Below are positions 3,192 through 54,134 of a stretch of DNA of 64,000 nt, piece by piece. The notes under the pieces were generated by a model. That model did not search any database, was not told the origin of the DNA, and saw only the letters and a program-made list of their open reading frames with translations. The translations under genes and the position numbers were made by a program. Where the stretch lies: the IMG/VR virus record IMGVR_UViG_3300009103_000001, positions 62,001 to 126,000 of that record; one strand, given 5' to 3'. How positions within the stretch are numbered: position 1 is the stretch's first letter; each line of letters opens with the position of its first letter.

Positions 3192-3595
3192 TGAAACTTA
3201 TAAAACACAATGGTTTAAGAGTTAGTAAATCAAATGTACATGGTTTTGGTGTTTTCACTGATGTAGAGATAAAAAGTGGTGATTTGGTGGAACAATGTCC
3301 AACACACATATTATATGACACAAAAGTAGACTTAATACACCCTTCATTAAAAAGTTATGTGTATCAATTTACAATAGATGATAAACTAACACCAATAGTG
3401 CTTTTAGGGTGGGGTGGTATATATAACCATAGTGATGACCATAATTTAAATTATAAAGGAGAATATTTAATAGTCCAAGACGAAAATAAATTGGTTTTTA
3501 GTTTTTGGGCTAATAGAGATATTGAGGCCGGAGAAGAGTTATTTATTAATTATGGTAAAGAATATTTTAAGTATTTTAATATTAATAAAATTTAA
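3191..3595 (+). CDS. SET-domain protein (putative lysine methyltransferase)
   Basis: SET motifs HGFGVF, IYNHS and RDIEAGEELFINYG. Confidence 0.85.
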   Translation: MKLIKHNGLRVSKSNVHGFGVFTDVEIKSGDLVEQCPTHILYDTKVDLIHPSLKSYVYQFTIDDKLTPIVLLGWGGIYNHSDDHNLNYKGEYLIVQDENKLVFSFWANRDIEAGEELFINYGKEYFKYFNINKI

Positions 3596-3726: not shown

Positions 3727-4728
3727 ATGAGAAATATTATAAAAAAAATATTAAAAGAAAGTTCAGATTTTGATTGGGTTAGGGATATTGAAGTTGAGAC
3801 TGATTTAACACCGTCACAAATTGTTCATAGATATGATTCTTTACCAAGTGAGATTGTTGGCCCAATGATTAGTAATGGTTTTTTTGATGTATACTATGAA
3901 GACGCTGCCGGAAAATATATTTTAAAAACTGATAGTTGGTGTGACTTTATACCATTATTTAAAAATATTGATAGTCGTTATGGGTATATGGGTAGAGGTT
4001 TAGCTGAAAGAATATTTTGTGATGATGAGGATTATTGGGAACCATATGATTCACATGATTTAGTTTATGATTGGATAAACCAAGTTTGGGATTTTGTTAC
4101 GCGAGATAAAACTTTATACAAATATATAGTAGAATGGATTAATGATAATCTTATTGGTGATGAAATGCATTTTGAGAGAAAAGAAACAACTTTAACAAAA
4201 GAAGATGTTCTTGATTGGTCTGCTGATTCTGATGTTTTGGGTGAAATGATTGATGAATTAGATGTTTTTGAAGATTTAAAACTTGAATTAACTTGGGCCT
4301 ATGGTTCAGCATATAATGTTGCGGCTAGAGATGGAATATATAACTCAGCTGTTGGAGCTGTAATGGATTTCTTTGGTAAAGGTGAGTGGGTACCCAAAGA
4401 AAAGACAGCGAAGTATACATTAAATTTTGACATCACAGATTTAATACAAGATGTTTTAGTGGAGGGAATAGAAAATTGTTGGGACCAATGTAGTAAATAT
4501 TGGAACCCAAAAAACAGAGATTTGGGGGACCAAACAGAAGAAGAAGCTTTTGAAGAGTGGTGTGAAGAATGTTGGGATTTCCCTTTTAGTGAGTTCGGTA
4601 ATTTTATTGATTTTTTTGAATTTTACTTGGATGATAGGGATGAATTATTAACTCCAAGGTTTGATGAATACCCAGATGATAGTAAGATATATCCTTATTT
4701 TGTAGAAGATGTGTATGATAGAATATGA
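3727..4728 (+). CDS. Leader-bearing acidic protein (MRNIIKKILKESSDFDW)
   Basis: Start moved from TTG 3604 to ATG 3727, which follows ATATTTAT at 3712 and begins the shared leader. Confidence 0.8.
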   Translation: MRNIIKKILKESSDFDWVRDIEVETDLTPSQIVHRYDSLPSEIVGPMISNGFFDVYYEDAAGKYILKTDSWCDFIPLFKNIDSRYGYMGRGLAERIFCDDEDYWEPYDSHDLVYDWINQVWDFVTRDKTLYKYIVEWINDNLIGDEMHFERKETTLTKEDVLDWSADSDVLGEMIDELDVFEDLKLELTWAYGSAYNVAARDGIYNSAVGAVMDFFGKGEWVPKEKTAKYTLNFDITDLIQDVLVEGIENCWDQCSKYWNPKNRDLGDQTEEEAFEEWCEECWDFPFSEFGNFIDFFEFYLDDRDELLTPRFDEYPDDSKIYPYFVEDVYDRI

Positions 4729-6815: not shown

Positions 6816-7373
6816 ATGAAAAAAATACTTACAACAATATTAATTTTAATTAGTCTATTATCTATAGGACAAGATAAAGAGTTATTTGAATATGTGAATC
6901 AATACCGAATAGGTAATAATTTAAAACCATTAGAGTGGTCTGATAAATTAGTTAAAATATCTATAGGACAAAATAATAAGAATATTAAAGATAAATCTTT
7001 ATCACATAGTGTACATAATTCTTATGAAAATTGTTTATTAGGTTATACTATAGCCCCAACCAAAACTGAACATAAAGATTTCATTAAATTTGTTAAAAAA
7101 TATTTTAATTACAAATATAATGTAGACAAAGATATGTCAAATGAAGAATTAAATAGTTTAACTAGGATGTACATGATTTATATTTGGCATAATTCACCAA
7201 AACATAAGGAAAATATGTTAAAAAAAGATGTTAAACATTGTTCATCTGAAAGTTATATTGGTGATTTCGAAATTTTTAATGGTAAATTAAATGTTAATGG
7301 TAAAAGTTATACATATAAACAATTATCTACACACTATAAAGTAGAGTATTACGCCACAATGAATTTACAATGA
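6816..7373 (+). CDS. CAP (SCP-like) domain protein with signal peptide
   Basis: N-terminal signal peptide; VNQYR...LKPLEWSDKL, LSHS, EN and WHNSPKHKENML motifs. Confidence 0.8.
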   Translation: MKKILTTILILISLLSIGQDKELFEYVNQYRIGNNLKPLEWSDKLVKISIGQNNKNIKDKSLSHSVHNSYENCLLGYTIAPTKTEHKDFIKFVKKYFNYKYNVDKDMSNEELNSLTRMYMIYIWHNSPKHKENMLKKDVKHCSSESYIGDFEIFNGKLNVNGKSYTYKQLSTHYKVEYYATMNLQ

Positions 7374-8390
7374 TGGTTCAAAAAAACAAGGTAGTTCCTT
7401 ACCCTTAACTTTCACTTTTTTACATTTAGGTTTTTTATGTGTTTTTTTAGTGAAAATACTTTTTCTATATTTATTATATTTTTTAGGTTTAAATGTTTGT
7501 TTTAGTTTAACCATTTCAACCTCATAGTTATACAACATAGAACCAGCTTCCATTTTTGTCTCAGCTGTAACTTCTAATAAAACACTTATTTTAACATACC
7601 TATATTCTTTAGTTTGTTCACGAGCCTCACTTTTTTCATTTCTCGACATATTTGGTCCATATATATTTGGCCCTTGGTTTGGTTTTGTAATCACATCAAC
7701 ATCATCTACATCAAAACTATCAACAATATTAACAACACTTTCAGCTCTAAGTTTAGCTAGTTCTTCATTACCCATACTTATAGGTTCTTTATCTGTAGAA
7801 GATTCAATAACAACTTTAGTTATTTCACCTTCTTCACTAAGTACATTGAAAATATCATTAATTTTACTTTTTGCGTATTCAGATAACTCATACCCACCCG
7901 TTTCAAAAATATTGTCAGTATCTAATTCAATAGAGTCCTCTAATACTATAATTGAATTTTTAGGTAAAAGTGTATCTTTAGTAACTTTTATGTCAGAAAC
8001 AGTGAAACCTTGTCTTTGTTTAGAAATTATACTATGGTCACTTTTAGTTTTATATGTTTCTATTTTTGCGTTTTCAAAATCTTTTTTACTAACAGATTTT
8101 AATTTTTCTAAATTTTCCCTATTCAACTCAATTTGAGCATCACTAAATAACTGATATAAATCCTCATCACCAGATTCTAATTTATTTTGTATTAACTCAG
8201 CCGCTTTTATATGTGACGAATCTATTGGTTGGGTTTGTGCTTTTATATCGGTCATTGAAGCTAAAGCTATTAATCCGGCTAAAGCCCATTCTTTAAACTC
8301 TTCCTCTAATATTTCTTCTTTTAATATTTCGTCACTTCTGTAGTTTATTACAGATTTAAGTTGACTCTCTTTTAGAATAATTCTTTTCAT
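7365..8390 (-). CDS. Leader-bearing OmpA-like (peptidoglycan-binding) domain protein
   Basis: MKRIILKESQLK leader; FETGGYEL, ESSTDKEP, NEELAKLRAESV and RYVKI resemble the OmpA C-terminal domain; ATATTTAT upstream on the minus strand (8396-8403). Confidence 0.7.
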   Translation of the reverse strand: MKRIILKESQLKSVINYRSDEILKEEILEEEFKEWALAGLIALASMTDIKAQTQPIDSSHIKAAELIQNKLESGDEDLYQLFSDAQIELNRENLEKLKSVSKKDFENAKIETYKTKSDHSIISKQRQGFTVSDIKVTKDTLLPKNSIIVLEDSIELDTDNIFETGGYELSEYAKSKINDIFNVLSEEGEITKVVIESSTDKEPISMGNEELAKLRAESVVNIVDSFDVDDVDVITKPNQGPNIYGPNMSRNEKSEAREQTKEYRYVKISVLLEVTAETKMEAGSMLYNYEVEMVKLKQTFKPKKYNKYRKSIFTKKTHKKPKCKKVKVKGKELPCFFEPSL

Positions 8391-15406: not shown

Positions 15407-15488
15407 CATCACACCAACTAATTAATATTTAATATATCATAATTAAACATTTAATAGTATCTTAGATATTTATTAATAAAACAATATT

Positions 15489-16634
15489 ATGTCTTTAGTT
15501 ATAACAGATGCAGAAAAAGAAAAATTATTTAGACAAGTAAAACATAGGTTAGGTGCACCTATTAGAAAAGTTGAATTAGAAGATGAAATGTTTTGTACTT
15601 TATTGGAGATTTCAATAGAAGACCATTCAGCTTTTATTAATGAATGGTTAATCGAAGCTCAGTGGACATCAATATATGGGACTGATATTACAACAACAGA
15701 TTTAGCACAGGCTTTAACGGTTAGAGGTATGGAATATGAGGATTCATTTACATACGCATATTCAAAAATTGTTGGGTTACAAGCTCGTGGACCTTGGGAA
15801 CTTAAAAAAGATTATGTAACAGTACAAAAAGGACAACAAGTTTATGAAATACCAGCAGGTAGAGAGATAAATGAAGTATTATGGATTTCACCACCTACTA
15901 TAGATAATGCTTTATTTTCTACATATGGTTTTGGTGATTATGGTTACGGTGGTGGCTATGGACAAGTACCTTTCGGTGGTGGAGGTGGAGGTTATGGTTA
16001 TGGTGGTTTTTATTTATCACCCGCTTACGATATATTATCAAGAGACGCAGATTATGACTTAAAACAGAGAATAATATCTAGTGATTTAGTTTATAAAATA
16101 ACAGCAGGACCTAATGGTACAAAATTATTACATTTAATACCACCACCAGGTTCTAGAATTAGTTTTGGTTTAGCTGGTCTAACAACTGGTATTGATGTAA
16201 CTGGTAGTAAGGTTTGGTACCATTATTATGAAACAACATCTGAAGAAGAAAGACAAAGATGTCTTAATGAAAATAAAGATATTATTAAATTACCTAGTGA
16301 TGTTCCAGTTGATATTGTTAATTTTAGTGAATTAAATAACCCATCTAAACAATGGGTAAGAGATTATTTTACAGCTATGTGTAAAGAAACTTTAGGTAGA
16401 GTTAGGGGTAAATTTGGTGGTAGTTTAGGTATTACAGACGCAGAAGTAACAATGGATTATGATTCATTATTATCTGAAGCTAAAGAAGATAAAACAGCTC
16501 TGTGGGAAAGACTTAAAGAGAGATTAGAAAGGTTGATGCCAGATAAGATGTTAGAAAGAAAAGCTCTTGAGGCTGAAAATCTTAATAAGTCATTACAATA
16601 TCGACCACTTGGTCATCATTGGAATGTTATATAA
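15489..16634 (+). CDS. Neck protein (T4 gp13-like)
   Basis: RLGAPIRKVEL N-terminus and WVRDY..AMCKETLGRVRGKF C-terminus; late motif at 15465. Confidence 0.75.
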   Translation: MSLVITDAEKEKLFRQVKHRLGAPIRKVELEDEMFCTLLEISIEDHSAFINEWLIEAQWTSIYGTDITTTDLAQALTVRGMEYEDSFTYAYSKIVGLQARGPWELKKDYVTVQKGQQVYEIPAGREINEVLWISPPTIDNALFSTYGFGDYGYGGGYGQVPFGGGGGGYGYGGFYLSPAYDILSRDADYDLKQRIISSDLVYKITAGPNGTKLLHLIPPPGSRISFGLAGLTTGIDVTGSKVWYHYYETTSEEERQRCLNENKDIIKLPSDVPVDIVNFSELNNPSKQWVRDYFTAMCKETLGRVRGKFGGSLGITDAEVTMDYDSLLSEAKEDKTALWERLKERLERLMPDKMLERKALEAENLNKSLQYRPLGHHWNVI

Positions 16635-16649
16635 AAAAATTATTAATAG

Positions 16650-19469
16650 ATGTCATTTTTTCAGGCTAGACCTCAATTTGAAGACAGACAAATAGTACAA
16701 TATAGTAATCAAAGTATAACACTTTCAGGTACTAGTATAATTAATTCTACTGTATTAGATTTTACTGGAACAACTACTGCTGAAACATCAGTAAATATTG
16801 CCGGACTTCAAGGTTATTTAAATGGTACTAGATTATCTGGTCTAAAAATTAAACCACCATTTCTAAGGATGAGTGCCTCTACTGGTACAACAACGGTTGA
16901 TGTTACAGGTTATGTATTAAAATCTATAACACCAGATGGTTCAGTAGAATGGTCACCAATTAGTGGGGTTAGTTGGTCGGTATCGGCTTGTACATCACCA
17001 TTATATGTTACTAATATAGTTGCGTGTCCAACATCGGCGGGGACAATAACAATTACCGCGGGTGAACTACATGTTGATGGTGGTATAAAAATAACTGATG
17101 GTACAGAACAATCTGGTTATGTGTTAACAACAGACTCTAGTGGTAACGCTACTTGGCAATATAATGCAACAGGATTTTCAGGTAATACATCTGCTACATG
17201 TATTTCGGATTTATGGGTGACAAATGTTCATGGTTGTTCACCAATAACGGTACACGATAGTGTACAATCTTTAGGCTCTGAAGCAACAGGAACAACTTCA
17301 TTTGCTTTTGGTAGTTCAGTTAAAGCACACGGTAATTATTCACACGCAGAGGGTATAGGTGGCTTAGCTAGTGGTGATTATTCACATATTCAAAATGCTG
17401 GAGCATTAGCTAGTGGTGATTTTTCACACGCAGAAGGATTTGAAACAGAAGCTACAGCACATGCGGCACACGCTGAGGGTAGTGCAACTCAAGCTAATGG
17501 ATTTGCTTCACACGCTGAAGGTTCTTCTAATGCGGCCACAGGTAACACCGCACATGTTGAGGGTACTAATAATCAGGCATTTGGGGATTATTCACATGCA
17601 GAGGGTAGGGAAAATAAAGCATATGGTGACACATCACATGTTGAAGGTAGACTTAATTTAGCTAGTGGTGATTATTCACACGCAGGAGGAGCAGTAAATA
17701 CAGCTAGTGGTAATTATTCACACGTAATTGGTGTTGGTAATATAACTAGTGGTCTAGTGGCATACGCAGAAGGTAGACTAAATAGAGCGACTGGAGATTA
17801 TTCCCACGCTGAAGGTTATGGTAATACAGCAAGTGGAAATTATTCACACGTAAGTGGTGGACATAATGGAATAAAATTTGGGGGTGTTTCTGCTACTACA
17901 TTTTCATCTAGAGCATATGGTTATAGTACATTAGCTTCAGGTATATTATCTTACGCTAGTGGTTGGCAAACTATAGCCTCAGGTGAGGTGTCTTTCGTAC
18001 ATTCAAGTGCTTCTACATTGTCTGGTAATAATAGTGCTATTTTAGGTGGTAGTGGTATTGTCGGTAGTACATCCGACACTGTGTATGTACCAAATTTAAA
18101 TGTTAGAAACGATTATATTTTACATTCCGATAGTGTATTAGAAATGTCAGAAATATCTAATATATCTCCAGCTTTTAAAGGTTCTTATACGGAATTTGAT
18201 TGGACTGGGATTACAACAAATATAATATCAAATAATAATCCAGGTGGTAGTTCTGGAATATTAATAGGGGAATTTAGTGATTACCCAACAACAAAAAATC
18301 ACGGATTTTTAACTTATTATGGTAGTGGATACACAAGAAGTGGTTCACCAACAACTGGAACAGATTTTTACAGAAATAAATTTGTATTAAAAGGCTCAGA
18401 TAGTATTGACGGAATGGTCATCAACCCAATTAACAATAATAATTCAGCAAAATTATGGTGGGAAATTGATGATAATTCTGTTATGATGTTAATGGGTGAT
18501 GGAGCCACAAAAGGTAATCTTGGAATAGCATTAAATCCAAATGGTGATGAAGAACCAACCGCTAATTTTCAAATCGGTGGTACGGGTACAACAGGTGACT
18601 TTAAATATATTGACGGAAATCAACAAAGTGGTTATGTTTTAACCTCAGATGCTGATGGATTAGCTAGTTGGCAACCATCTTCTGGTGGTTTTTCTGGTAA
18701 TACATCGGCAACATGTATAAGTGATATATATGTAACAAATGTACATTCTTGTTCACCTTTAAATATAAACCCATTAGATGAGGGTAATGTTTATTTTGGT
18801 AGTACAAGTGGTGTTACAGTAGATATTACAAATACAAGATTAGGTGTAGGAACCAATTCACCACAAAATAAATTACATATTAAAGGAACGGGTATATCAT
18901 CATACCCATCGATTGATAGTAATAGTGTCGCAATATTTGAAAATAACCCTGAAACAACAATAACTCTTTTATCAGATAATGCTAGAAATTCTAAAATTGA
19001 ATTTGGTGATGAGCTAAGTGTTAAAGGTAGGATTATTTATGACAACTTGAATAACCAAATGATTTTTGTTACAAGTGGTAAAACAGGTGATAATGCAATA
19101 ACTATATCACAGGACAATGATGTTTCAATAGGTGGTTCATTAATAACATCGGGTAGTATTATAAGAAACACTAGGGATTTAAGTATAACCATCCCTACGG
19201 CTTTTCTACTTACATCATCTGATGATATAATATTTTTAACCACTTCTAGTGGGGGTGATATAGTTTTACCAGAAGCGGGCAGTTTAAATAATGGTAGGGT
19301 CATTGAAATAATAAGAGTAAGTGGTACAAACGCTATAAGAGTTGGTGATAATACAGCGAACGTGAACGGTACAGCGTCTCCAGGTATATCGCTATCATCT
19401 ACACTATATTCTAAAAATACTTTTACTTGTGATGGTAGTAATTGGTTCTATCAAACATCATCACCTTAA
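16650..19469 (+). CDS. Fibre/adhesin protein with SHAEG repeats and C-x11-C modules
   Basis: About 15 SHAEG-type repeats; GYVLTxDxxGxAxWQ twice; RLGVGTNSPQNKLHI fibre motif. Confidence 0.85.
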   Translation: MSFFQARPQFEDRQIVQYSNQSITLSGTSIINSTVLDFTGTTTAETSVNIAGLQGYLNGTRLSGLKIKPPFLRMSASTGTTTVDVTGYVLKSITPDGSVEWSPISGVSWSVSACTSPLYVTNIVACPTSAGTITITAGELHVDGGIKITDGTEQSGYVLTTDSSGNATWQYNATGFSGNTSATCISDLWVTNVHGCSPITVHDSVQSLGSEATGTTSFAFGSSVKAHGNYSHAEGIGGLASGDYSHIQNAGALASGDFSHAEGFETEATAHAAHAEGSATQANGFASHAEGSSNAATGNTAHVEGTNNQAFGDYSHAEGRENKAYGDTSHVEGRLNLASGDYSHAGGAVNTASGNYSHVIGVGNITSGLVAYAEGRLNRATGDYSHAEGYGNTASGNYSHVSGGHNGIKFGGVSATTFSSRAYGYSTLASGILSYASGWQTIASGEVSFVHSSASTLSGNNSAILGGSGIVGSTSDTVYVPNLNVRNDYILHSDSVLEMSEISNISPAFKGSYTEFDWTGITTNIISNNNPGGSSGILIGEFSDYPTTKNHGFLTYYGSGYTRSGSPTTGTDFYRNKFVLKGSDSIDGMVINPINNNNSAKLWWEIDDNSVMMLMGDGATKGNLGIALNPNGDEEPTANFQIGGTGTTGDFKYIDGNQQSGYVLTSDADGLASWQPSSGGFSGNTSATCISDIYVTNVHSCSPLNINPLDEGNVYFGSTSGVTVDITNTRLGVGTNSPQNKLHIKGTGISSYPSIDSNSVAIFENNPETTITLLSDNARNSKIEFGDELSVKGRIIYDNLNNQMIFVTSGKTGDNAITISQDNDVSIGGSLITSGSIIRNTRDLSITIPTAFLLTSSDDIIFLTTSSGGDIVLPEAGSLNNGRVIEIIRVSGTNAIRVGDNTANVNGTASPGISLSSTLYSKNTFTCDGSNWFYQTSSP

Positions 19470-19480
19470 TAATATTAACC

Positions 19481-21229
19481 ATGGGAATTAGCAATTATTA
19501 TTTTAACAATATCGATGGTTCTTTGATTAATGATGATTATTGGGACTTCCATATAACCTCAGATGACCAAGGACAATGTTTATTCTATGCTTCTTCGTGT
19601 CAAGACACATCTTGTGATTATTCAATAGTGACAGATGATTTGGTTTTATGGTTTGATATTAACCAAAGTGGTACAACAACTGATGGTACATCATTAACAT
19701 CTTTAACAGAGTGGGATGGTACAACAATTAAACCTTCTTCTGGTTTTACATTATGTGATTTTGGTTTAACAGGTGTTGATAATGGAAGGTATGATAGATT
19801 ATCAGGTCTTACCGTTACAATAACGTCAGCTGATACCAAAGTTGTATTATATCCAGTAACGGGATATACAATAAATTCTGCAACTGCGACTGCCGCAACA
19901 AAGGGTATATATGATTATCCATGGGATTATATAACTGGTACCACCACTACAAGTAGAGAATGTGTTGTTGGTGATACAGTATGTTTAAATGGGGGGTTCT
20001 ATCAAGGATATTTTAAATTAGATTTCTTGGAACCAAACCCTATAGAAGAAACTATAACCGCAACTACAAACAATAATTGTAGTACATCAAGTAGTAGCGT
20101 AACAAAAGAATTGGTTCCCGGTGATTCAAATGCAATGATATATGATTTAATGCCAACAGAGTATGAAAATGGTTGGTCAATGGAGACTTGGATTAAATGG
20201 GATAATTCAACTTGTTCTGGTGATACTGGTACAACATTAAACGATGTTTATACCGGTAATACTGGGTTTTTCTTTTATATAGGAACAAGAGCTGAAAATA
20301 AATTTAGAAATGTATTTTCTGGTGAAACAGGTTTATATACTTGTAATGGAAAAGTACCATTATCACCAGACAAACAAGTAGATGTAAACACAGGTGGACA
20401 AACTTGGTTTACTACTAGTAGTTATAGATTTGCGTGTGATAACAGTAGTTGTGTTTGTCCCACAACTGGTAGTACAAATACTGGTACAACAGTATTAGAA
20501 TATTGTGACCAACTATCTGAAAACGCTTTAGGATTCAGAATTAAACCTGATGGTAAAATAGGTTATAGAAAAATGTCTGTAACTGGAGCTTGTTTTAATA
20601 ATGAATTTAGAATGACCGGTACAACAATGGAGGAAGGATATTCGGATAATTCTGTTATACTTTCAGGTGATTCTTGGATGCATATTGTAGTTACTTATAC
20701 CCAAGGTGATGGGTATAGAAATAGTTTACCCGCAGGAACATTAAAATTTTGGGTTAATGGTAGGGTCATATATAGAGTTAAGAATTTTATAGGATTACAG
20801 TTAAGAGCATTAAATGAATGGAGTTCAAAACAATTAGGTGTACCATTTAATATAACGTGGGGTGGTGGAACACAAGGATTGGTTGAATCACAAACATTTG
20901 GTGGACCAGACCCAGCAGATAGAGGGTTACAACTTGAGAAGTATTTTGCTGGTTCATTTTTAGGAGAACTATCACAATTAAGATTTTATGAAAAACCACT
21001 TAATCTATTAGAAATAAGAAATAATTTCTTTGTTGATTGTAACCGTTATTGTATAAGAGAAACGTTTGGTGGGGCACAAATTATACAACCAACATCAAAT
21101 TTATGTGGTGATTGTAAATCTGGGACACCTGCAACATATTTATTATATGATAATGATTGTTTTATCGTAACAGAAAAAGGCGATAAAATAACAACAGAAC
21201 ATTTTAGACCATGTCCACCAGCATGTTAA
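19481..21229 (+). CDS. Cys/Thr-rich virion protein with LamG/concanavalin-like domain
   Basis: WSMETWIK, WMHIVVTY, LKFWVNG and FLGELSQLRFYEKPL are LamG hallmarks; start moved to ATG 19481. Confidence 0.75.
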   Translation: MGISNYYFNNIDGSLINDDYWDFHITSDDQGQCLFYASSCQDTSCDYSIVTDDLVLWFDINQSGTTTDGTSLTSLTEWDGTTIKPSSGFTLCDFGLTGVDNGRYDRLSGLTVTITSADTKVVLYPVTGYTINSATATAATKGIYDYPWDYITGTTTTSRECVVGDTVCLNGGFYQGYFKLDFLEPNPIEETITATTNNNCSTSSSSVTKELVPGDSNAMIYDLMPTEYENGWSMETWIKWDNSTCSGDTGTTLNDVYTGNTGFFFYIGTRAENKFRNVFSGETGLYTCNGKVPLSPDKQVDVNTGGQTWFTTSSYRFACDNSSCVCPTTGSTNTGTTVLEYCDQLSENALGFRIKPDGKIGYRKMSVTGACFNNEFRMTGTTMEEGYSDNSVILSGDSWMHIVVTYTQGDGYRNSLPAGTLKFWVNGRVIYRVKNFIGLQLRALNEWSSKQLGVPFNITWGGGTQGLVESQTFGGPDPADRGLQLEKYFAGSFLGELSQLRFYEKPLNLLEIRNNFFVDCNRYCIRETFGGAQIIQPTSNLCGDCKSGTPATYLLYDNDCFIVTEKGDKITTEHFRPCPPAC

Positions 21230-21245
21230 ATAAAATAATATAACT

Positions 21246-22109
21246 ATGGCGAATAAAAGAATAGACCAATTACCAAAAAATACTAACGCGTTAAAAGACT
21301 CGGATTTAATACCTATATGGGATGTTGTTAATAGTAAAACTGAAAGTGTATCTTTAGGTTCTTTATCTAGTTTTATAGATACGGCAACATTTACTGGTAA
21401 TACAGAAGCTACTTGTATATCTAATTTATATGTTAGTAATCTTTTCCCTTGTTCACCATTAACAATTTACGGTAATGTTGTTATACCTTCAGGTATAACG
21501 GTAGGTGGTACCATTACATGGTCTGGTGGTAGTGGACATAGTGGTCACGGAGTGACCATTACACCACAAGGTATTACCATAACTGGTAGTACAAGTGGTG
21601 GTACAGGTACAACAAGTACTACAATAACAAGTAGTGGTATTAATACACCTGGTTTAACTACACCTAATATATCTACGTCAGGTATAACAGTAGGTGGTAC
21701 CATTACATGGTCTGGTGGTAGTGGACATAGTGGTCACGGAGTGACCATTACACCACAAGGTATGTCAATAACTAGTAGTGGTAGCACTATAATAATTTCT
21801 AACTCAGGTATATTAAATAATACTAGATTTTTAGGTAATACTGGTGGTACTATAACTATAAATGATTATTTTATAATAATTAACGGAAATGGTAGTCCAA
21901 CATGGACACTACCTAATTCACCTAATAATGGTAAAGAATTTTTATTTCGTAGAAACGATACAAATATAGGTACTTGCACTATTCAAACTTCTGGTAGTGA
22001 TGAAATTTTAGAATTAAATACTGGTACAGTTAGTACATCTATAACATTAATAAATGGTGAATCAAAAAAAGTTATTTACCATGATGCCATATGGTATGAA
22101 GTAATATAA
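21246..22109 (+). CDS. Fibre-like virion protein with internal duplication
   Basis: MANKRIDQLP N-terminus; C-x11-CSP module; duplicated 28-aa segment; C-terminal TLPNSPNNGKEFLF fibre-type domain. Confidence 0.8.
   Translation: MANKRIDQLPKNTNALKDSDLIPIWDVVNSKTESVSLGSLSSFIDTATFTGNTEATCISNLYVSNLFPCSPLTIYGNVVIPSGITVGGTITWSGGSGHSGHGVTITPQGITITGSTSGGTGTTSTTITSSGINTPGLTTPNISTSGITVGGTITWSGGSGHSGHGVTITPQGMSITSSGSTIIISNSGILNNTRFLGNTGGTITINDYFIIINGNGSPTWTLPNSPNNGKEFLFRRNDTNIGTCTIQTSGSDEILELNTGTVSTSITLINGESKKVIYHDAIWYEVI
21489..21763 (+). repeat. Two 86-bp direct repeats (21489-21574, 21678-21763) with one mismatch
   Basis: tcaggtataac(g/a)gtaggtggtaccattacatggtctggtggtagtggacatagtggtcacggagtgaccattacaccacaaggtat. 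Confidence 0.9.
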
Positions 22110-22118
22110 TTAAATAAT

Positions 22119-22511
22119 ATGGGACAAAACTTTTTTATACGTAAAAATTCAGAATTACCAATATTAAAAATGAAAGTTATTAATGATGGTAGAAGTGATT
22201 ATAAAAAGATTTTTGATAATCTAGAGAATGCTGCAGTGACATTTTCAATGGTCGATTCTGAAACAGGTAAACCAAAAGTATTTAATAAACAAGCTTTTAT
22301 AATACCAGTAATAAAAGATATATGTAAAGAAGATGAAGAATACTATATTGGGTATAAATTTAGTGAAAGAGAAGTTAATAGAGTGGGAACATATAAAGCT
22401 GAATTTAAAATAGATTTTTTAGATGATGGGTGTTCATTAATTGTACCAATAAGAGAAGATTTATTTGTTAATGTAACAGATAGTTTCACTAACTCAAAAA
22501 TAGTTTGTTAA
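22119..22511 (+). CDS. Putative virion structural protein (BppU-like/Ig-like)
   Basis: FFIRKNSELPIL...AAVTFSM...GTYKAEFKIDF pattern; structural gene context. Confidence 0.6.
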   Translation: MGQNFFIRKNSELPILKMKVINDGRSDYKKIFDNLENAAVTFSMVDSETGKPKVFNKQAFIIPVIKDICKEDEEYYIGYKFSEREVNRVGTYKAEFKIDFLDDGCSLIVPIREDLFVNVTDSFTNSKIVC

Positions 22512-23050
22512 TGGAAAAATTAATTAAAAAAATATTAAAAGAAGAATTATTAAAAGAAAACTTAAGGTTTGATGATATCTATAGTGAGTTATGGGATAAG
22601 ATGTTATATAGTGTTTGTATGAAGTACACTAATGATATTAATGTAGCACAGGATTATTGTCAAAATGGTTTTATGAAAGTATATAATAATCTTCATACAT
22701 ATAAAAATACTGGTTCTTTAGAAGGTTGGGTTAGAAGAATTATTAATAACTCAATGATAGATGATTTTAGAAAAAAGAAAAATCAACCAACTGCACAAAC
22801 AATAGATGAACCGGATTGGGGACGTATAGATTCAGGGTATGATGATGAAGAATACAGTGAAGATGATAGGATGCACTATGTTAAACAAGCTATAACAAAT
22901 CTAAGCCCATCAAACAGAGAAGCTTTTGAATTATACTTGGATGGTTATAAACATGAAGAAATCGCTGATATGTTGGGCATTAGTGTTGTGGCCTCTAAAT
23001 CAAGGGTTTTTAAAGCTAAAAGAGAAATTAGGAAATTAATTAATCTCTAA
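22511..23050 (+). CDS. ECF-type sigma-70 factor carrying the shared leader (MEKLIKKILKEELLKE)
   Basis: Region 2 AQDYCQNGFMKVY...GSLEGWVRRIINNSMIDDFRK; region 4 LSPSNREAFEL...HEEIADMLGIS...SKSRVFKAK. Confidence 0.9.
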   Translation: MEKLIKKILKEELLKENLRFDDIYSELWDKMLYSVCMKYTNDINVAQDYCQNGFMKVYNNLHTYKNTGSLEGWVRRIINNSMIDDFRKKKNQPTAQTIDEPDWGRIDSGYDDEEYSEDDRMHYVKQAITNLSPSNREAFELYLDGYKHEEIADMLGISVVASKSRVFKAKREIRKLINL

Positions 23051-23728: not shown

Positions 23729-26206
23729 CTATTTTTTTGGTTTTTTAATTGTTACGGAAACTTTATTTTTAGTAAAGCTAACAACAATTGTATCACCTTC
23801 TTTTAATTCACCATCTAACATTTTTTCAGCTATTGGGTCTTCAACATATCGTTGAATAGCTCTATTTAATGGTCTAGCTCCGTATTTCTCATCATAACCT
23901 TTTTCTGTTAAATAGGCTTTCATTTTTGGTGTAACAGTTAGATTGTAACCTAACTCTAACATTCTATCTTTAAGTTCTTTTATAGGTAAATCTACAATTT
24001 TCTTAATTTCTTCTTTATTTAAAGATTTAAAAATTATAATATCATCTAAACGATTTAAAAATTCTGGTGAGAATGTTTTTTTAACAGAGTCTTCAATTAC
24101 CCCATCTCTAATCTCTTCAAGATTATCTATTTTAGCTTTAGTACCAAAACCAACACCAGTACCAAAATCTTGTAATTTTCTAGCTCCAATATTAGATGTC
24201 ATAATTATTAAAGTATTTCTGAAATCAACTTTACGACCTAAACCATCAGTTAAGTGCCCTTCATCAAATACTTGTAATAAAACATTAAATACATCTGTGT
24301 GAGCCTTTTCTATTTCATCTAATAATATTAAAGAATATGGTTTTCTTCTAACTTTTTCAGTTAGTTGGCCACCTTCCTCATAACCAACGTAACCTGGAGG
24401 TGCACCAACTAATTTAGACACAGAATGTTTTTCCATATATTCAGACATATCAACTCTAATAACCGAATCTTCTGAACCATAAACAATTTCAGATAAAACT
24501 TTAGCTAAATGTGTTTTACCAACACCAGTAGGACCTAAAAATATAAAAGAACCAATTGGTTTATCATGGTTTTTAATACCCATTCTATTTCTTCTAATAG
24601 CTTTAGATATTTGTTCCACAGCCCCATCTTGACCTATAACTCTAGATATTATATCACTAGACATATTCTTAAGTTTTTCTAAGTCAGTTTGTGTGACTTT
24701 ATTTACTGGTATACCTGTGACCATAGAAACAACTTTTGCGACATCTTCTTCTGTTATTGTTTTTCTAACAGAATTAAGGTTTTCATTCCATTCTTGTGTG
24801 GCATCATCCAATTCTTTTTTCAACCTTCTTTCTTCATCACGAAGTTTTGCGGCTTCTTCATATCTTTGTGCCCTAACCACATCTTTCTTCTTCTCGTCAA
24901 CCTCATTAATTTTTTCTTCTAAATCAGTAACATTTTTAGGTGGTTGTACGTGTACTTGAGCTCTAGCACCAACCTCATCTAATATATCGATAGATTTGTC
25001 TGGTTGTTCTCTATCTGTAATATATCTATCAGCCATTTTCACACAAGCTTTAATTGATTCATCGTCATAAATAACTTTATGATGGTCTTCATACTTATCT
25101 TTAATATTTTCAAGAATAACCAAAGTATTTTCAGTACTTGGTGGTTCAATCATAACTTGTTGAAATCTACGTGTTAAAGCACCATCCTTTTCAAAGTTTT
25201 CACGAAACTCATCTAATGTAGTTGCCCCAATACATTGTATTTCACCCCTAGCTAAAGCTGGTTTCAATATATTTGAAGCGTCTAAAGAACCAGATGCATT
25301 ACCAGCACCAACCATAGTATGTATTTCATCAACAAAAAGTATAACATCATCAGTTTTACTAAGTTCTTGTAAAATACCTTTTAATCGTTCTTCAAATTGA
25401 CCCCTATATTTGGTACCAGCAACTAATAAAGCCATATCCAAAGTTACAAGTCTCATATCATAAAGAATTCTAGGACATTTTCTTTGGGCGATTTTTAAAG
25501 CCAAACCTTCTGCAATAGCTGTTTTACCAACACCAGGTTCACCAATTAAGATTGGGTTATTCTTTTTACGTCTACTTAGTATTTGAGAAACACGTTCTAT
25601 TTCGTCTTCTCTTCCGACAATTGGGTCTATTGCCCCATTCTCAGCCAATTTAGTAATATCCCTACCAAAATTATCTAATATTGGAGTATTACTATTTGAG
25701 TCATTTTTCTTTAACCCTCCGGTATTTTTTTCTTCTTCCATACCACTAAACATTCTATTCATAATTGTGTCATTTTTAATTTCTATTAATATACTTTTAA
25801 AATTCTTATAAGTCAAACCTTGATTATTTAAAACTTTAGTACCACCAAACTCTCTATATTTTAATATTGACAACATAACATGTTCAGTGCCAACATATTC
25901 ATCATTTAATTTGTCAGACTCCATTTCAGCAACATTTAATACTAATTTAGAGTTTTTACTTAATGGTATTAATTTTTTTTTAATTCTAGGTTTTCTAATT
26001 TTTAACCTCATATAACTATCTAATTTAGAGAATAAATCATCAATATCAAATCCCATAGATAGTATAACCTCAACCACGTTATTATCATAGTCACTAAGCA
26101 AAGCCAATAATATATGTTCGGGGTCAATATCATTACCCCCTAATCTTATGGATTCCTTAAATGACCTTTTTAATATTTCTTTAATTTTTGGGTCTGTTGG
26201 TTTCAC
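23729..26206 (-). CDS. clpC: ATP-dependent Clp protease ATP-binding subunit ClpC
   Basis: Clp-N repeats, two AAA+ modules ([16 protein letters not shown]), UVR motif, [10 protein letters not shown]. Confidence 0.95.
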
Positions 26207-27173: not shown

Positions 27174-27764
27174 TTAGTTTTCATAATCTTCGTCATATTC
27201 CCTAGGGTCAAAACCAGATTGTCTTTTTTCGTATTCCTCAGTGTCTAATTCAGCTTCATACGCTCTACCATCCTCAAAACCTTTATTATATATTTTTTCT
27301 AATTTATTTTCTACTTCTTTTTCTTCACAATCCTCATACCCTTTTTCATGGCCAGCGTCATAACCTTCTTCATACCCAATATCCTTAGCTTCATCAATTT
27401 CATCCTCACAATCATATCTTGCATCTCGGCCCCCATCATGAAAACCCTCATTATAACCTTGTTGTTCACCCTCTTCCCAACCTTCTTGTTGTCCTTTTTG
27501 TCTACCATTGTCATAAATCTCTTCAGAAAAATTATATAAAACATTAGTCATTTCATCTAGTTTATCAACATCTAAACCTAAATTATAAATAAAGTCTACA
27601 AGTTTATATGTGCGGTTTTCTGGGTCATGAATATAATAATCCCAATCCTGTAAATCACTTAAGTCATTAGCAATATCAGTTTTAGAGGCCGGTTCAATAT
27701 CTCCAACCCAATCAAAATCATTATCTTCCTTTAATATTTTCTTAATTAAATCTTTCATTATCAT
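27174..27764 (-). CDS. Leader-bearing acidic protein (KDLIKKILKEDNDFDW) with GxxxG repeats
   Basis: GRQKGQQEGWEEGEQQGYNEGFHDG and GYEEGYDAGHEKGYED repeats, FliH/Yae1-like pattern. Confidence 0.8.
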   Translation of the reverse strand: MIMKDLIKKILKEDNDFDWVGDIEPASKTDIANDLSDLQDWDYYIHDPENRTYKLVDFIYNLGLDVDKLDEMTNVLYNFSEEIYDNGRQKGQQEGWEEGEQQGYNEGFHDGGRDARYDCEDEIDEAKDIGYEEGYDAGHEKGYEDCEEKEVENKLEKIYNKGFEDGRAYEAELDTEEYEKRQSGFDPREYDEDYEN

Positions 27765-37624: not shown

Positions 37625-38407
37625 ATGAATTTTGGTACTGTTAAGAATATATTTGTTGAAAAACTTATAGAATCCCATATTTCTGGTGAAAAAACAGGTA
37701 AAAACTTATATAAAAAGTTTTTAAAAACACTTAATGAAAGTGAAACATTAAAGACAGCTTTTGTTGTTTATAAGAATATTGAAAGTAATACAATTAGTGA
37801 TAAATTTGAGGCAAACCATTATTTAAAAGAAAATTTATCGTTAATTAATAATTTTACAGGAAAAAAATCATTAGTAGAAGAAACTAAAAAATTAATAGCA
37901 ATTTTAAAAGAAAATGATATTAATTTAGATGTTAAATCTAATAACTTACACGAATCTTTAGAAATACTTTTAACTAAAACTAGTAGTTTAAAAACCATAA
38001 ACAAATTACACGAATCTAGAATAAATGTTATAGATTGGTTAATTTCTAATAAAGATAGGGAAGAAAAAAGTGATTATGTTAGGGAAAATATAAATCCTAA
38101 GAAATTTTTAGATATAGCAACAAATAAATTTAATGAAAGATATTCAGAATTAACTGAAGAAGAAAAAAATATTTTAAAGGTACTTAAAGAATCTGACGAT
38201 AGTAGTTTAAAAAATATGGTTTTAAAACTAGTTAAAGATAACATTAACATTATAAATGAAAATTTGGATAAGTATTCAAATAATATGGATGTTAAAGGTA
38301 AGTTATTAGAAACTAAAGATAGGGTTTACAGAATGGTTGATAGTGATGATGATTTAGGTAATAAAATTTTAAAATTATATGATTTAAAAAATAGTATTAA
38401 TGGGTAA
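37625..38407 (+). CDS. Hypothetical head-module protein (helical, many LxE sites)
   Basis: CATATTTATT at 37601; directly after the portal. Confidence 0.8.
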   Translation: MNFGTVKNIFVEKLIESHISGEKTGKNLYKKFLKTLNESETLKTAFVVYKNIESNTISDKFEANHYLKENLSLINNFTGKKSLVEETKKLIAILKENDINLDVKSNNLHESLEILLTKTSSLKTINKLHESRINVIDWLISNKDREEKSDYVRENINPKKFLDIATNKFNERYSELTEEEKNILKVLKESDDSSLKNMVLKLVKDNINIINENLDKYSNNMDVKGKLLETKDRVYRMVDSDDDLGNKILKLYDLKNSING

Positions 38408-38915
38408 GATGTTTGGGTTTATTTTGGAGAATTTTGGGTTCAACTGTAAATATGAGTTTATGGGTTCAATGGTACACACACAAGTACTAGCTTTAACATT
38501 ACCTATAGCCGGCATTAGTTCAATAATTGAATCGTACTTTGGTTTACAGGGTTTAACAGTCCTATCTTTTGTGTTACTAATAACACTTGAACTTATATCG
38601 GGTATATGTGCGTCTAAGGTAAATAAAGAAAAAATCTCTTCTAGAAGGTTTAGTAGGTTTGGTTTTAAATTATTTGTATGGGTCACATTATTATTTATTT
38701 TAAATAGTTTAAGATTGGAATATTCCACATACGATACAACAATAGGTAAAACATCTTATTTATTATTTAATTGGTTACATAGTACAGTTTTTATTTATGT
38801 TAATTTAGAATATCTAATATCAGTTTTAGAAAATTTAGGGGTTATATCTGGTAAGAAAAAAGGTACATTAATTTCAGCAATTAAAAATAAACTAAAAAAC
38901 ATTCTTAAAAATTAA
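38400..38915 (+). CDS. Putative holin (phage holin 4-like)
   Basis: Multiple TM segments; ELISGICAS...ISSRRF...K...EYLISVLENLG. Confidence 0.7.
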   Translation: MGKMFGFILENFGFNCKYEFMGSMVHTQVLALTLPIAGISSIIESYFGLQGLTVLSFVLLITLELISGICASKVNKEKISSRRFSRFGFKLFVWVTLLFILNSLRLEYSTYDTTIGKTSYLLFNWLHSTVFIYVNLEYLISVLENLGVISGKKKGTLISAIKNKLKNILKN

Positions 38916-39329: not shown

Positions 39330-40460
39330 ATGAAAAAAGTTTTTTTAGAATACGTTTGGTTGGACGGAAATCAACCACAACAATTAAGAAGTAAAACTAA
39401 AGTTGTAAAACCTGAAGATATTAGAAAATATACTGATTCGGGGGTTATAAACCCCGAATATTCGGGATTTATTTGGGATTTACCTAAATGGTCTTTTGAT
39501 GGTAGTTCAACAAAACAGGCTAAAGCTGGAAAGGGGGAAAACACTGATTGTGTTTTAAAACCTGTATTTTCTTGTGATGACCCATTTAGAGGTGATTATC
39601 ATTACATTGTCCTTTGTGAGGTTTTAAATCCAGACGGAACCTTACACCCAACAAATAAAAGAGGTGAGTTAAGGGAGTTTATGGAAAAAAATAAAATAAC
39701 GGACTCTAAAGTTAGTTTAGAAAAAGCCAATTGGTTTGGTTGGGAACAAGAATATACTTTAACCACAAAACCGAATTTTAAAGAAGGTGAAGGATTACCA
39801 CTTGGGTTCAGACCTAATGAAGAACCTAGACCACAAGGAGATTATTATTGTGGTGTTGGAGCAGATAATATCACAGGTAGAAGAATTGTGGAAGAACATT
39901 TAGAAAAATGTGTTGAAGCTGGTTTGGATATCTCAGGTATTAACGCGGAAGTTATGTTAGGGCAATGGGAATACCAAATTGGACCTGTAACATCTCTTGA
40001 AGGGTCGGACCAATTATGGGTTTCTAGATATATTCTACAACGAGTGGCCGAAGAAAATGGTGTTAAAATATCATTTCACCCAAAACCAAAAACTGGTGAT
40101 TGGAATGGTTCAGGATGTCATGTCAATTTCTCAACCCCTGAAATGAGAAAAGAAGACGGTATTAAATTAATTAAAGATACAATGGCTAAATTAACACTTA
40201 CTCATGATGAACATATTAAAGTATATGGTTTATATAATGAAAAACGTATGACAGGTGAACATGAAACTTCTAGTATAAACGATTTTAGTTATGGTTATAG
40301 TACAAGAGATACTAGTATCAGAATTCCAGCACAGTCAATAATTGATGGTAAGGGTTATTTTGAAGACCGAAGACCCGCTTCTAATTGTGACCCATACAGT
40401 GTAGCATTACGTATGTTAAAAACTGTATATAACACTGTGAATGAAACAGTAGAAGTTTAA
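39330..40460 (+). CDS. glnII: Glutamine synthetase type II
   Basis: EYVWLDG, LRSKTK, WSFDGSST, EQEY, NAEVMLGQWEYQIGP, DWNGSGCH, SIRIP and YFEDRRPASNCDPY. Confidence 0.95.
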   Translation: MKKVFLEYVWLDGNQPQQLRSKTKVVKPEDIRKYTDSGVINPEYSGFIWDLPKWSFDGSSTKQAKAGKGENTDCVLKPVFSCDDPFRGDYHYIVLCEVLNPDGTLHPTNKRGELREFMEKNKITDSKVSLEKANWFGWEQEYTLTTKPNFKEGEGLPLGFRPNEEPRPQGDYYCGVGADNITGRRIVEEHLEKCVEAGLDISGINAEVMLGQWEYQIGPVTSLEGSDQLWVSRYILQRVAEENGVKISFHPKPKTGDWNGSGCHVNFSTPEMRKEDGIKLIKDTMAKLTLTHDEHIKVYGLYNEKRMTGEHETSSINDFSYGYSTRDTSIRIPAQSIIDGKGYFEDRRPASNCDPYSVALRMLKTVYNTVNETVEV

Positions 40461-42243: not shown

Positions 42244-42289
42244 TGGAATAAGTGAATTTATTGCATATTTATTAAGAAAAGTATTAAAT

Positions 42290-43296: not shown

Positions 43297-43313
43297 AAAT
43301 AATTTTTATTATA

Positions 43314-43634: not shown

Positions 43635-43641
43635 AATAATT

Positions 43642-43980: not shown

Positions 43981-44010
43981 AAGGATAATAATATTTATAA
44001 TAAAATAATC

Positions 44011-45156: not shown

Positions 45157-45158
45157 TC

Positions 45159-53764: not shown

Positions 53765-53777
53765 AGACGTTAAATCT

Positions 53778-54113: not shown

Positions 54114-54134
54114 CCTTTATATATATAAACACAT

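What the first reader, a model, noticed from the sequence alone, without database searches (positions are those of the whole stretch)
22511..23050. ECF sigma factor with a packaging-type leader at the end of a structural operon
Seen: a complete ECF sigma (regions 2 and 4) begins MEKLIKKILKEELLKE, almost the same as MGLIRKIIKEELLKE at 45805. It is translationally coupled (TAATG) to the last gene of the neck/fibre operon. Inference: it is made late, packaged and injected to redirect host RNA polymerase at the start of the next infection, which would be an unusual alternative to a virion RNA polymerase.
Basis: partly seen in the sequence, partly recalled or inferred. Interest (0 to 1): 0.82.

Follow-up and report, generated by a model that had tools for sequence, protein, structure and literature searches.

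The report
Phage sigma factor with head-targeting-like tag
An uncultured marine T4-like jumbo phage makes an ECF-type sigma factor late in infection, with its neck and fibre genes. The protein's N-terminus carries a short modular tag shared with many other late proteins, above all those encoded next to the head protease, so it may be loaded into the capsid, but no virion data exist.

Summary
Window 22511..23050 (+) encodes a complete 179-aa ECF sigma factor (regions 2 and 4; closest solved relative B. subtilis SigW). Its start overlaps the upstream stop (TAATG), at the end of a gp13-neck/fibre operon.

A tag, M-x-x-I-[KR]-K-I-[IL]-K-E or a longer MKKIIKLNE..KIIKE form, heads 16 of 101 genes in 74 kb.
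- All tagged genes lie in units led by an ATATTTAT promoter-like motif that also precedes terminase, portal, protease, scaffold and neck genes.
- No gene of the early-type cluster is tagged.
- In 28 related head modules, 54% of genes between the gp21-family protease and the scaffold carry the tag, against 7% elsewhere.
- The tag ends in Phi-Phi-x-Glu, the T4 gp21 cleavage pattern, and resembles the scaffold's own N-terminus, as the T4 capsid-targeting sequence does.

Caveats:
- The leader is not an add-on. It occupies helix alpha1 of ordinary ECF sigmas.
- In many relatives it is internal, in DHH-sigma fusions.
- Two early promoters look host-type.
- There are no virion or RNA data.

Best reading (about 0.4): a T4-CTS-like head-loading tag, so the sigma is probably head-loaded. 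Its injection and its role afterwards are untested.

The parts
22511..23050 (+). ECF-type sigma factor gene, 179 aa
   Evidence: JGI gene call identical
22511..22558 (+). N-terminal tag, aa 1-16: MEKLIKKILKE plus ELLKE, giving two Phi-Phi-K-E motifs
   Evidence: tag HMM 18.0 bits vs at most 12.5 in 2,280 shuffles; AF2 pLDDT 47-66 here vs >90 in the core; conserved in about 30 homologs, sometimes separated from the core by 15-25 aa inserts
22598..22780 (+). sigma region 2 (aa 30-90)
   Evidence: Pfam PF04542, 7e-14
22880..23026 (+). sigma region 4 (aa 124-172)
   Evidence: Pfam PF08281, 5e-13
22509..22513 (+). TAATG stop/start overlap with upstream ORF 22119..22511
15465..15473 (+). GATATTTAT promoter-like motif, nearest one upstream of the sigma on its strand (24 nt before the gp13 neck gene)
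15489..22511 (+). neck/fibre operon: gp13 neck, three fibre-like proteins, a 130-aa protein
42287..43018 (+). prohead core serine protease (T4 gp21 family, Peptidase_S77)
   Evidence: Pfam 5e-25; alignment with T4 gp21
43015..46296 (+). run of head-module genes between protease and scaffold; 43015, 43642, 44011, 45461 and 45805 carry the tag
   Evidence: same arrangement in 28 relatives
45805..46296 (+). 163-aa head-module protein with the tag most like the sigma's (MGLIRKIIKEELLKE, then VGG linker)
   Evidence: homolog in L085 carries the long tag instead
46824..48029 (+). acidic coiled-coil scaffold-like protein; its N-terminus (..RKSIIDEALLESE..) resembles the tag
48065..49888 (+). major capsid protein, Gp23 family; the site aligned with the T4 maturation site reads LINE/T
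313..861 (+). tagged gene (MDIRKIIKEE..) directly behind GATATTTAT
3727..4728 (+). tagged gene (tag followed by DFDW)
27174..27758 (-). tagged gene (tag followed by DFDW) behind GATATTTAT
50369..51842 (+). two tagged genes (50369 and 50793), both with DFDW after the tag
53360..54431 (+). three small genes with the long tag
61297..62079 (-). second, virus-specific sigma-like protein (possible gp55 analogue)
   Evidence: weak BLASTP to T4 gp55, E 0.006, colinear; ESM Atlas nearest clusters are viral 'RNA polymerase sigma factor family', score 0.99
23729..26206 (-). ClpB/ClpC-like AAA+ ATPase, convergent neighbour of the sigma; synteny conserved in L004, and in L009 by ORF size, position and N-terminal similarity only

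Best explanation
The ORF is a functional ECF-type sigma factor of an uncultured marine T4-like jumbo phage (210-kb contig).

**Expression.** It is transcribed with neck and fibre genes from a late-type promoter. Its translation start overlaps the stop of the upstream gene.

**The tag.** Its first 11-16 residues are a copy of a clade-wide modular N-terminal tag. I read the tag as the functional equivalent of the T4 capsid-targeting sequence. It is an amphipathic helix that resembles the scaffold's own N-terminus. It would take the protein into the scaffolding core of the prohead, and it ends in Phi-Phi-x-Glu, where the gp21-family prohead protease would cut.

**Consequence.** On this reading the sigma is loaded into heads together with a set of other tagged late proteins. 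It would enter the next host with the DNA, as T4 Alt and the internal proteins do.

**Shown here**
- the sigma's identity
- its late-type operon context
- the tag's statistical reality, modularity and genomic distribution
- the T4-type head machinery

**Inferred**
- targeting, cleavage and ejection
- what the sigma does after entry; its promoters are unknown
For: 1. **T4-type head module.** Terminase and portal, Peptidase_S77 protease (5e-25) and Gp23 capsid protein (5e-71). The residue pattern at the T4 gp23 maturation site (LTE/A) aligns with INE/T here and VSE/A and ISE/A in two relatives.
2. **Tag design matches T4 leaders read from the T4 record.** IPII/IPIII start MKTYQEFIAE, gp24 MAKINELLRE, gp22 MLKEQLIAE, Alt MELITE. 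The CTS is 10 aa, with targeting residues 4 and 7 and processing residues 8 and 10 (PMC9026906). MGLIRKIIKE has hydrophobic residues at 4, 7 and 8 and Glu at 10.
3. **Enrichment in the head module.** In 28 close relatives, 57/105 genes between protease and scaffold are tagged against 31/417 elsewhere.
4. **Late-only distribution.** All 16 tagged genes in 74 kb lie in units led by ATATTTAT, the motif before terminase, portal, protease, scaffold and neck genes. None of the genes carrying the early-type leader is tagged.
5. **Modularity.** The sigma family and the 45805 family each occur with either the short or the long tag. Variable 15-25 aa linkers follow the tag, and natural sigma homologs exist without it.
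6. **Conserved Phi-Phi-x-Glu.** It is kept before the sigma core in 54 of 60 distinct contexts, including all DHH-sigma junctions. Cellular ECFs have Gly at that position.
7. **Resemblance to the scaffold.** The scaffold N-terminus resembles the tag, as T4 gp22 resembles the CTS.
8. **Structure model.** AF2 gives the tag low confidence and the core high confidence.
Against: - There is no virion proteome, no cultured relative and no RNA data.
- The tag sits where ordinary ECF sigmas have helix alpha1, and SigW aligns from residue 1. It could simply be a structural helix with a phage-typical sequence.
- In 13 relatives the same segment is internal, in a DHH-sigma fusion. This fits a helix or linker as well as a cleavage site.
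- Cargo includes a CCA-adding/poly(A) polymerase-family enzyme, a DHH-like phosphoesterase, and proteins with hydrophobic segments. These are not classic capsid contents.
- Sixteen percent of genes tagged is a lot.
- Early-cluster promoters look like primary-sigma promoters.
- No ECF-type bipartite promoter was found in the window.
- The head-module loci are related to one another, so the Fisher p-value overstates independence.
Confidence: 0.4

Rival explanations
1. The sigma works inside the cell that makes it. It is a late or very-late transcription factor, possibly the factor for the ATATTTAT promoters with positive autoregulation. The tag serves another purpose common to late proteins, such as stability, assembly into another complex, or recognition by the neighbouring phage Clp ATPase.
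For: - In every relative with a tagged sigma, the sigma or DHH-sigma gene lies directly behind the ATATTTAT motif. That is the usual signature of an autoregulated ECF sigma.
- Phage ECF-like sigmas that read a single -10-like element exist (phiEco32 gp36, as summarised in PMC4281155).
- The Clp ATPase is a conserved neighbour.
- Tagged cargo includes cytoplasmic-type enzymes.
Against: - The sigma keeps a full region 4, but no -35-like element accompanies ATATTTAT.
- The window encodes a second, gp55-like sigma candidate that could serve a -10-only late promoter.
- This reading does not explain why the tag is concentrated next to the protease and scaffold genes.
- It does not explain why the tag ends in the protease's cleavage pattern.
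Confidence: 0.35
2. The 'leader' is only the normal N-terminal helix (alpha1) of a SigW-like ECF sigma. Its likeness to other phage proteins reflects the Lys/Ile/Glu/Leu-rich composition of a 30% GC genome and a general preference for such N-termini. It has no shared function.
For: - SigW begins MEMMIKKRIKQ.. and is colinear with the leader.
- Total length is normal for an ECF sigma.
- The segment is retained when internal in fusions.
Against: - The tag HMM built without the sigma gives 18 bits, against at most 12.5 in 2,280 composition-matched shuffles and under 5 bits for SigW and cellular ECFs.
- There are synonymous codon differences under identical residues.
- Two different tag flavours sit on orthologous sigmas, with inserts between tag and core.
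- The tag is strictly absent from early-cluster genes of the same composition.
Confidence: 0.12
3. The tag-coding DNA is conserved mainly as a recombination linker that lets late-gene cassettes shuffle behind a shared promoter. The peptide itself is incidental.
For: - Long-tag copies in the window are nearly identical at the DNA level.
- A metagenome contig shares about 35 nt of the sigma's tag-coding DNA and then continues into a different gene.
- Tags are swapped between cargo families.
Against: - The short tags differ at synonymous sites while keeping the peptide.
- The peptide pattern (Glu invariant, P2 position variable) is conserved over sigma homologs that are only 35-55% identical.
Confidence: 0.08

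Closest known systems
T4 capsid-targeting sequence (CTS) of internal proteins IPI-III and the propeptide of Alt, cut by prohead protease gp21
   Same: - A short N-terminal amphipathic leader ends in (L/I)-x-Glu.
- It is shared by otherwise unrelated, dispersed late genes.
- It resembles the scaffold N-terminus.
- The phage has a gp21-family protease, a gp22-like scaffold and a gp23 capsid protein.
- One T4 cargo (Alt) reprograms host RNA polymerase after injection.
   Different: - The sequence differs (K/I-rich).
- A second 25-aa flavour exists.
- Far more genes carry it.
- Several tagged genes sit inside the head module.
- The cargo here is a sigma factor.
- Nothing is shown experimentally.
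Phage-encoded ECF-like sigma factors (phiEco32 gp36; the 'sigma-W' genes annotated in crAss-like phages); closest solved structure B. subtilis SigW
   Same: - Two-domain sigma2-sigma4 architecture of about 180 aa.
   Different: - Untagged homologs in three other phage contigs (L057, L060, L063) sit behind host-type promoters, TAtcTTTG. Early-to-middle expression that switches on later genes is the pattern known for such phage sigmas.
- This one is in a late structural operon.
- It carries the late-protein tag.
- It has no anti-sigma partner nearby.
Virion-packaged RNA polymerases (N4 vRNAP, phiKZ virion RNAP; cited as examples in PMC12282133)
   Same: - Transcription machinery would be delivered with the genome, if the packaging reading is right.
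   Different: - Those are complete polymerases that transcribe early genes from non-host promoters.
- Here only a sigma would be delivered, and the two early promoters seen look host-type.
T4 gp55 late sigma
   Same: - A phage sigma tied to late genes.
- The late-type promoter here is a single AT-rich element without a -35 box.
   Different: - gp55 has only a region-2-like part; this protein has a full region 4.
- A separate gp55-like candidate exists at 61297..62079.

Membership tests
ECF (group 4) sigma-70 family | sigma2 (regions 2.1-2.4) and sigma4 (4.1-4.2) only, about 20 kDa | tested here: met
   Pfam r2 and r4_2; profile hit to SigW at 8e-32 and many other ECF sigmas; Foldseek matches with E <= 0.001 are all ECF sigmas
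ECF (group 4) sigma-70 family | co-transcribed anti-sigma factor (common, not universal) | tested here: not met
   The downstream neighbour is a convergent glucosaminidase; the upstream 130-aa protein has no family hit
ECF (group 4) sigma-70 family | bipartite -35/-10 cognate promoter, usually before its own gene | tested here: inconclusive
   No GAAAC/GGAAC..CGT sites above chance. Relatives have ATATTTAT directly upstream of the gene, but without a -35 element
T4-type capsid-targeting sequence / gp21-processed propeptide | phage encodes a gp21-family prohead protease, a scaffolding core and a gp23-type shell | tested here: met
T4-type capsid-targeting sequence / gp21-processed propeptide | short N-terminal leader ending in (L/I)-x-Glu, shared by unrelated proteins | tested here: met
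   T4 leaders read for comparison
T4-type capsid-targeting sequence / gp21-processed propeptide | leader is necessary and sufficient for encapsidation | not testable with these tools
   Needs reporter fusions in a cultured phage-host pair
T4-type capsid-targeting sequence / gp21-processed propeptide | leader is removed by the prohead protease; the mature protein is present in virions and ejected | not testable with these tools
   No proteomics exists; no cultured relative was found
Virion-delivered transcription machinery | early phage genes use promoters unlike the host's and are transcribed by the delivered enzyme | tested here: not met
   Two early-cluster promoters read TTGATA-N17-TAT(A/T)TT, also compatible with the Bacteroidota -33/-7 type. 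Only two promoters were seen, so this is weak
T4 gp55-type late sigma | region-2-only factor without region 4 | tested here: not met
   A full Sigma70_r4_2 domain is present

The most novel reading that the evidence does not exclude
A clade of marine T4-like jumbo phages uses a modular CTS-like tag to load a varied set of late proteins into the head: an ECF sigma factor (free or as a DHH-phosphoesterase-sigma polyprotein cut at the internal tag), a CCA-adding-type enzyme and many unknowns. The sigma is ejected with the DNA and gives host core RNA polymerase a phage specificity from the first seconds of infection. It would be the first virion-delivered sigma factor.
Probability: 0.28. Interest if true: 0.88.

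Novelty: new variant of a known kind. Interest (0 to 1): 0.68.

Why it matters
Phages are known to deliver whole RNA polymerases (N4, phiKZ) or an RNA-polymerase modifier (T4 Alt) with their DNA. My limited literature search found no report of a delivered sigma factor.

Even if the sigma stays in the producing cell, the tag system matters on its own account:
- It is a recognisable, interchangeable N-terminal address on about one late gene in six.
- It is tied to one promoter class and to the head-protease neighbourhood.
- It would let one read the likely capsid contents of uncultured T4-like phages from sequence alone.
- It offers a candidate encapsidation signal for engineering.
- It raises a testable idea: the DHH-sigma fusions may be polyproteins cut by the head protease.

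Tried and rejected
- **DNA and protein searches of cultured phages.** Only the Clp ATPase matched at the DNA level. Sigma hits were below 30% identity and started at residue 19 or later. The 45805 family had no match. No relative with proteomics exists.
- **PHROGs and Pfam on neighbours and tagged cargo.** Mostly no hits.
- **Canonical ECF promoter scans.** At or below chance.
- **Generic sigma-70 and terminator scan around the gene.** Promoter-like sites were no commoner than in shuffles and gave no usable lead. The only clear terminator hairpin follows the Clp gene.
- **gp55 test for 61297..62079.** Weak BLASTP, no PDB sequence hit, only immuto 'hypothetical' hits. The Atlas lead supports 'viral sigma family'. 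I kept it as a lead only.
- **RNA evidence.** No RNA run was listed as holding the stretch, and three metatranscriptomes of the same study laid no reads.
- **Global search for the long tag.** The single search of protein representatives was wasted by my error. A full-length 514-aa row was left in alignment A4, so the profile modelled that family. A region-limited word search found only 2 proteins.
- **First scaffold-boundary count.** It used a faulty pattern and was replaced.
- **Exact look-up of the right-edge protein.** It failed, so only the left flank of the contig was read.
- **Rejected idea.** The tag is not a translation-optimising codon run: early genes of the same genome use a different conserved leader and have no tag.

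Full report
**What is there**

Window 22511..23050 (+) is an intact 179-aa ORF. Pfam finds sigma-70 region 2 (aa 30-90) and region 4 (aa 124-172) and nothing else. A profile of 39 homologs matches B. subtilis SigW at 8e-32, then other ECF sigmas. The AF2 model (mean pLDDT 80) retrieves ECF sigmas for all matches with E <= 0.001.

The ATG overlaps the TAA of the upstream ORF, giving TAATG at 22509-22513. Upstream on the same strand lie a T4 gp13-type neck protein (PF26809), three fibre-like proteins and a 130-aa protein. Downstream, a glucosaminidase and an 825-aa ClpB/ClpC-like ATPase converge on the sigma.

**What genome this is**

The window is part of a 210,157-bp marine metagenome contig with 30% GC. 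It encodes:
- a large terminase and a portal;
- a Peptidase_S77 prohead protease of the T4 gp21 family and a Gp23-family major capsid protein;
- an acidic coiled-coil scaffold-like protein just before the capsid gene.

The nearest cultured capsid relatives are Flavobacterium phage immuto and Microcystis phage Mel-JY01, at about 40% identity. It is a distant T4-like jumbo phage.

**The leader is a genome-wide tag**

A pattern scan, followed by HMMs built from window proteins other than the sigma, shows two N-terminal forms:
- a short form, M-x-x-I-[KR]-K-I-[IL]-K-E-[EDS];
- a long form, MKKIIKLNENDIENLVKKIIKE-[ED].

In 74 kb (the window plus 10 kb to its left) 16 of 101 genes carry one of them. 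The sigma's N-terminus scores 18.0 bits against the short-tag HMM. The best of 2,280 composition-matched shuffles scores 12.5, and SigW and the cellular-type ECF homologs score under 5. Codons differ at synonymous sites between the sigma and 45805, so the peptide is what is conserved.

**The tag is modular**

About 40 metagenomic sigma homologs (45-80% identity) were aligned.
- Most begin with the short tag.
- Several have a 15-25 aa insert between the tag and the sigma core.
- Some carry the long form (MKIKITESQYNRVILKE..).
- Two start directly at the core.
- Distant cellular-type ECFs have the usual E..LI.GC..G helix instead.

The head-module protein 45805 has the short tag in most relatives and the long tag in L085, joined at the same VGGYDD junction.

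**Where tagged genes lie**

A promoter-like motif, (G)ATATTTAT, occurs 18 times against 3.5 expected. It sits 13-32 nt before the ATG of first-in-operon genes, including terminase, portal, protease and neck; before the scaffold gene it lies 70 nt upstream.

Eight tagged genes lie directly behind the motif. The other eight, the sigma among them, are internal members of units that it leads. No copy lies between the neck-gene motif at 15465 and the sigma, apart from a core match inside a fibre gene at 21136.

Ten kilobases left of the window is a cluster of about 25 small genes on the other strand. Twelve of them have a conserved AAACCAAAACAAAG leader before the ATG. Two promoters of primary-sigma type are present (TTGATAAT-N9-ATTACTTAT). 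None of these genes has ATATTTAT or a tag. The only two tagged genes embedded there point the other way, and each has its own GATATTTAT.

In relatives, the sigma or DHH-sigma gene is directly preceded by the same motif. Untagged sigma homologs of other phages are preceded by TAtcTTTG, the Bacteroidota -7 type. The tag therefore goes with one promoter class, the class that serves virion genes.

**Link to the head**

I fetched 80 head modules from IMG/VR using the protease as query. In the 28 close relatives where the scaffold could be located, 57 of 105 genes between protease and scaffold are tagged, against 31 of 417 elsewhere (Fisher 5e-25). The loci are related, so this is not 28 independent trials. 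Distant relatives have no genes in that interval and almost no tags.

The tag ends in Phi-Phi-x-Glu. The T4 gp23 maturation site (LTE/A) aligns with INE/T in this capsid protein and with VSE/A and ISE/A in two relatives. The N-terminal parts of the proteases carry LIKE/F, LLTE/S, IIKE/S and MLE/S at one aligned place.

T4 leaders read from the T4 record are MKTYQEFIAE (IPII, IPIII), MAKINELLRE (gp24), MLKEQLIAE (gp22) and MELITE (Alt). The literature gives a CTS of 10 aa, with targeting at residues 4 and 7 and processing at 8 and 10 (PMC9026906). MGLIRKIIKE fits that spacing. The scaffold here begins ..RKSIIDEALLESE.., close to the tag, just as T4 gp22 resembles the CTS.

**Findings that cut the other way**

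- The sigma is not longer than ordinary ECFs. SigW (MEMMIKKRIKQVKKGDQDAF..) aligns with the leader from residue 1, so the tag occupies helix alpha1 and is not an added piece.
- In 13 relatives the sigma is the C-terminal domain of a roughly 645-aa ORF. The order is an N-terminal tag (MNIIIKEELLNEGG), a DHH-like phosphoesterase (weak Pfam hit, 1e-3), a junction that keeps ..KKSILKEV.. or a variant, and then the sigma. In L004, L009 and L025 the two are separate adjacent genes. Another lineage has long tag, then a 150-aa hydrophobic-rich domain, then the sigma.
- Across 60 distinct contexts, 54 keep Phi-Phi-x-Glu before the core, and all 13 fusions do. This fits an internal cleavage site, but equally a conserved helix.
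- Tagged cargo in relatives includes a PolyA_pol/CCA-adding family enzyme (1e-37). In the window, one protein matches the long-tag pattern and has a hydrophobic segment and an OmpA-like domain, but it scores only 6.8 bits on the short-tag HMM and is not among the 16.
- The window also encodes a second, virus-specific sigma-like protein (61297..62079). It has a weak colinear match to T4 gp55, and its Atlas neighbours are named viral sigma factors. It could serve the -10-only late motif.
- No ECF-type bipartite promoter was found.

**Weighing**

The tag's distribution, its end motif, its likeness to the scaffold, its restriction to late units and the T4 precedent together make a prohead-core targeting and processing signal the best single explanation. 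I put that at about one half.

If so, the sigma is head-loaded (about 0.4 overall). That it then acts as an injected sigma in the next host is less likely still (about 0.28). The main reasons are that the early promoters look host-type and the sigma's targets are unknown.

The main rival (0.35) is a sigma that acts late in the producing cell, perhaps autoregulated from ATATTTAT, with the tag doing something else. That the leader is only a SigW-like alpha1 helix resembling the tag by chance is unlikely (0.12), given the HMM control and the tag swaps.

No RNA or protein data could be brought to bear.

**Verdict**

This is a new variant of known kinds, a phage ECF sigma combined with T4-type head targeting, and the proposal is testable.

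Noticed in passing
window, e.g. 296, 15465, 33574, 35675, 42265, 50347, 53333; minus strand 27162, 27768, 57319, 61275: Promoter-like motif (G)ATATTTAT(t/a). It occurs 18 times against 3.5 expected and lies 13-32 nt before first-in-operon late genes. It has no -35 partner. It also lies directly upstream of sigma or DHH-sigma genes in relatives.
   Followed up: yes
L148:1-9700 (contig 52313-62000, left of the window): Cluster of about 25 small minus-strand genes. Twelve have a conserved AAACCAAAACAAAG leader immediately before the ATG. Two promoters read TTTTTTATTGATAAT-N9-ATTACTTAT. This is a distinct, early-looking gene class.
   Followed up: partly
L010:2474-4423, L011:4883-6805, L017:6678-8639 and ten more loci: In many relatives the sigma is fused in frame to the C-terminus of a DHH-like phosphoesterase (about 645 aa in total). 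In L004, L009 and L025 the two are adjacent separate genes. No DHH homolog was found in the window.
   Followed up: partly
L034:4051-5064, L037:3787-4797, L048:9503-10516: Another sigma lineage has a long tag, then a roughly 150-aa hydrophobic-rich domain (..ADIVGIFDPTGIVD..), then the sigma core, about 337 aa in all.
   Followed up: no
window 61297..62079 (-): Second sigma-like protein. It has a weak colinear match to T4 gp55, and its ESM Atlas neighbours are viral 'RNA polymerase sigma factor family' clusters.
   Followed up: partly
window 23729..26206 (-): Phage-encoded 825-aa ClpB/ClpC-like AAA+ ATPase with a Clp_N domain. It is a convergent neighbour of the sigma, conserved in L004 and, by ORF size, position and N-terminal similarity, in L009. 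At the DNA level it resembles Clp genes in very large uncultured phages.
   Followed up: no
window 3727, 27174(-), 50369, 50793; also 4725 and 31659 without the tag: A second short motif, [DN]-D-F-D-W-[VA]-x-D, often follows the short tag directly. It also occurs near the N-terminus of two untagged proteins.
   Followed up: no
L100:6413-7945 (-), L107:6013-7953 (-), L096:7528-7947 (-): Tagged PolyA_pol/CCA-adding family nucleotidyltransferase (one with a weak cyclic-phosphodiesterase-like tail), encoded next to the head protease in relatives.
   Followed up: partly
window 39330..40460: Glutamine-synthetase-like gene (Gln-synt_C and Gln-synt_N) inside the head-gene region. It is preceded by a terminator and an early-type promoter-like sequence.
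   Followed up: no
window 48065..49888: The Gp23-family capsid protein is 607 aa. It has an insertion of roughly 200 aa relative to T4 gp23 and to the immuto and Mel-JY01 proteins.
   Followed up: no
window 16650..19469: The 939-aa fibre-like protein contains a long run of degenerate repeats of the type ..G(D/N)YSHAEG.. . The relative L004 has a YadA_head-like hit in a fibre gene.
   Followed up: no
window 22509-22543 (run X2): A short contig from a marine metagenome matches only the tag-coding 35 nt of the sigma gene. It then continues into a different gene (..TDFDWVKDNP), so tag-coding DNA is nearly identical between different genes.
   Followed up: no
window 3191..3595, 6816..7373, 7365..8390 (-), 38400..38915, 62080..63979 (-): Other annotated domains: SET domain protein and CAP-domain protein (JGI precomputed hits), OmpA-like protein with a long-tag-like N-terminus, a holin family protein, and two glycosyltransferases.
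   Followed up: no
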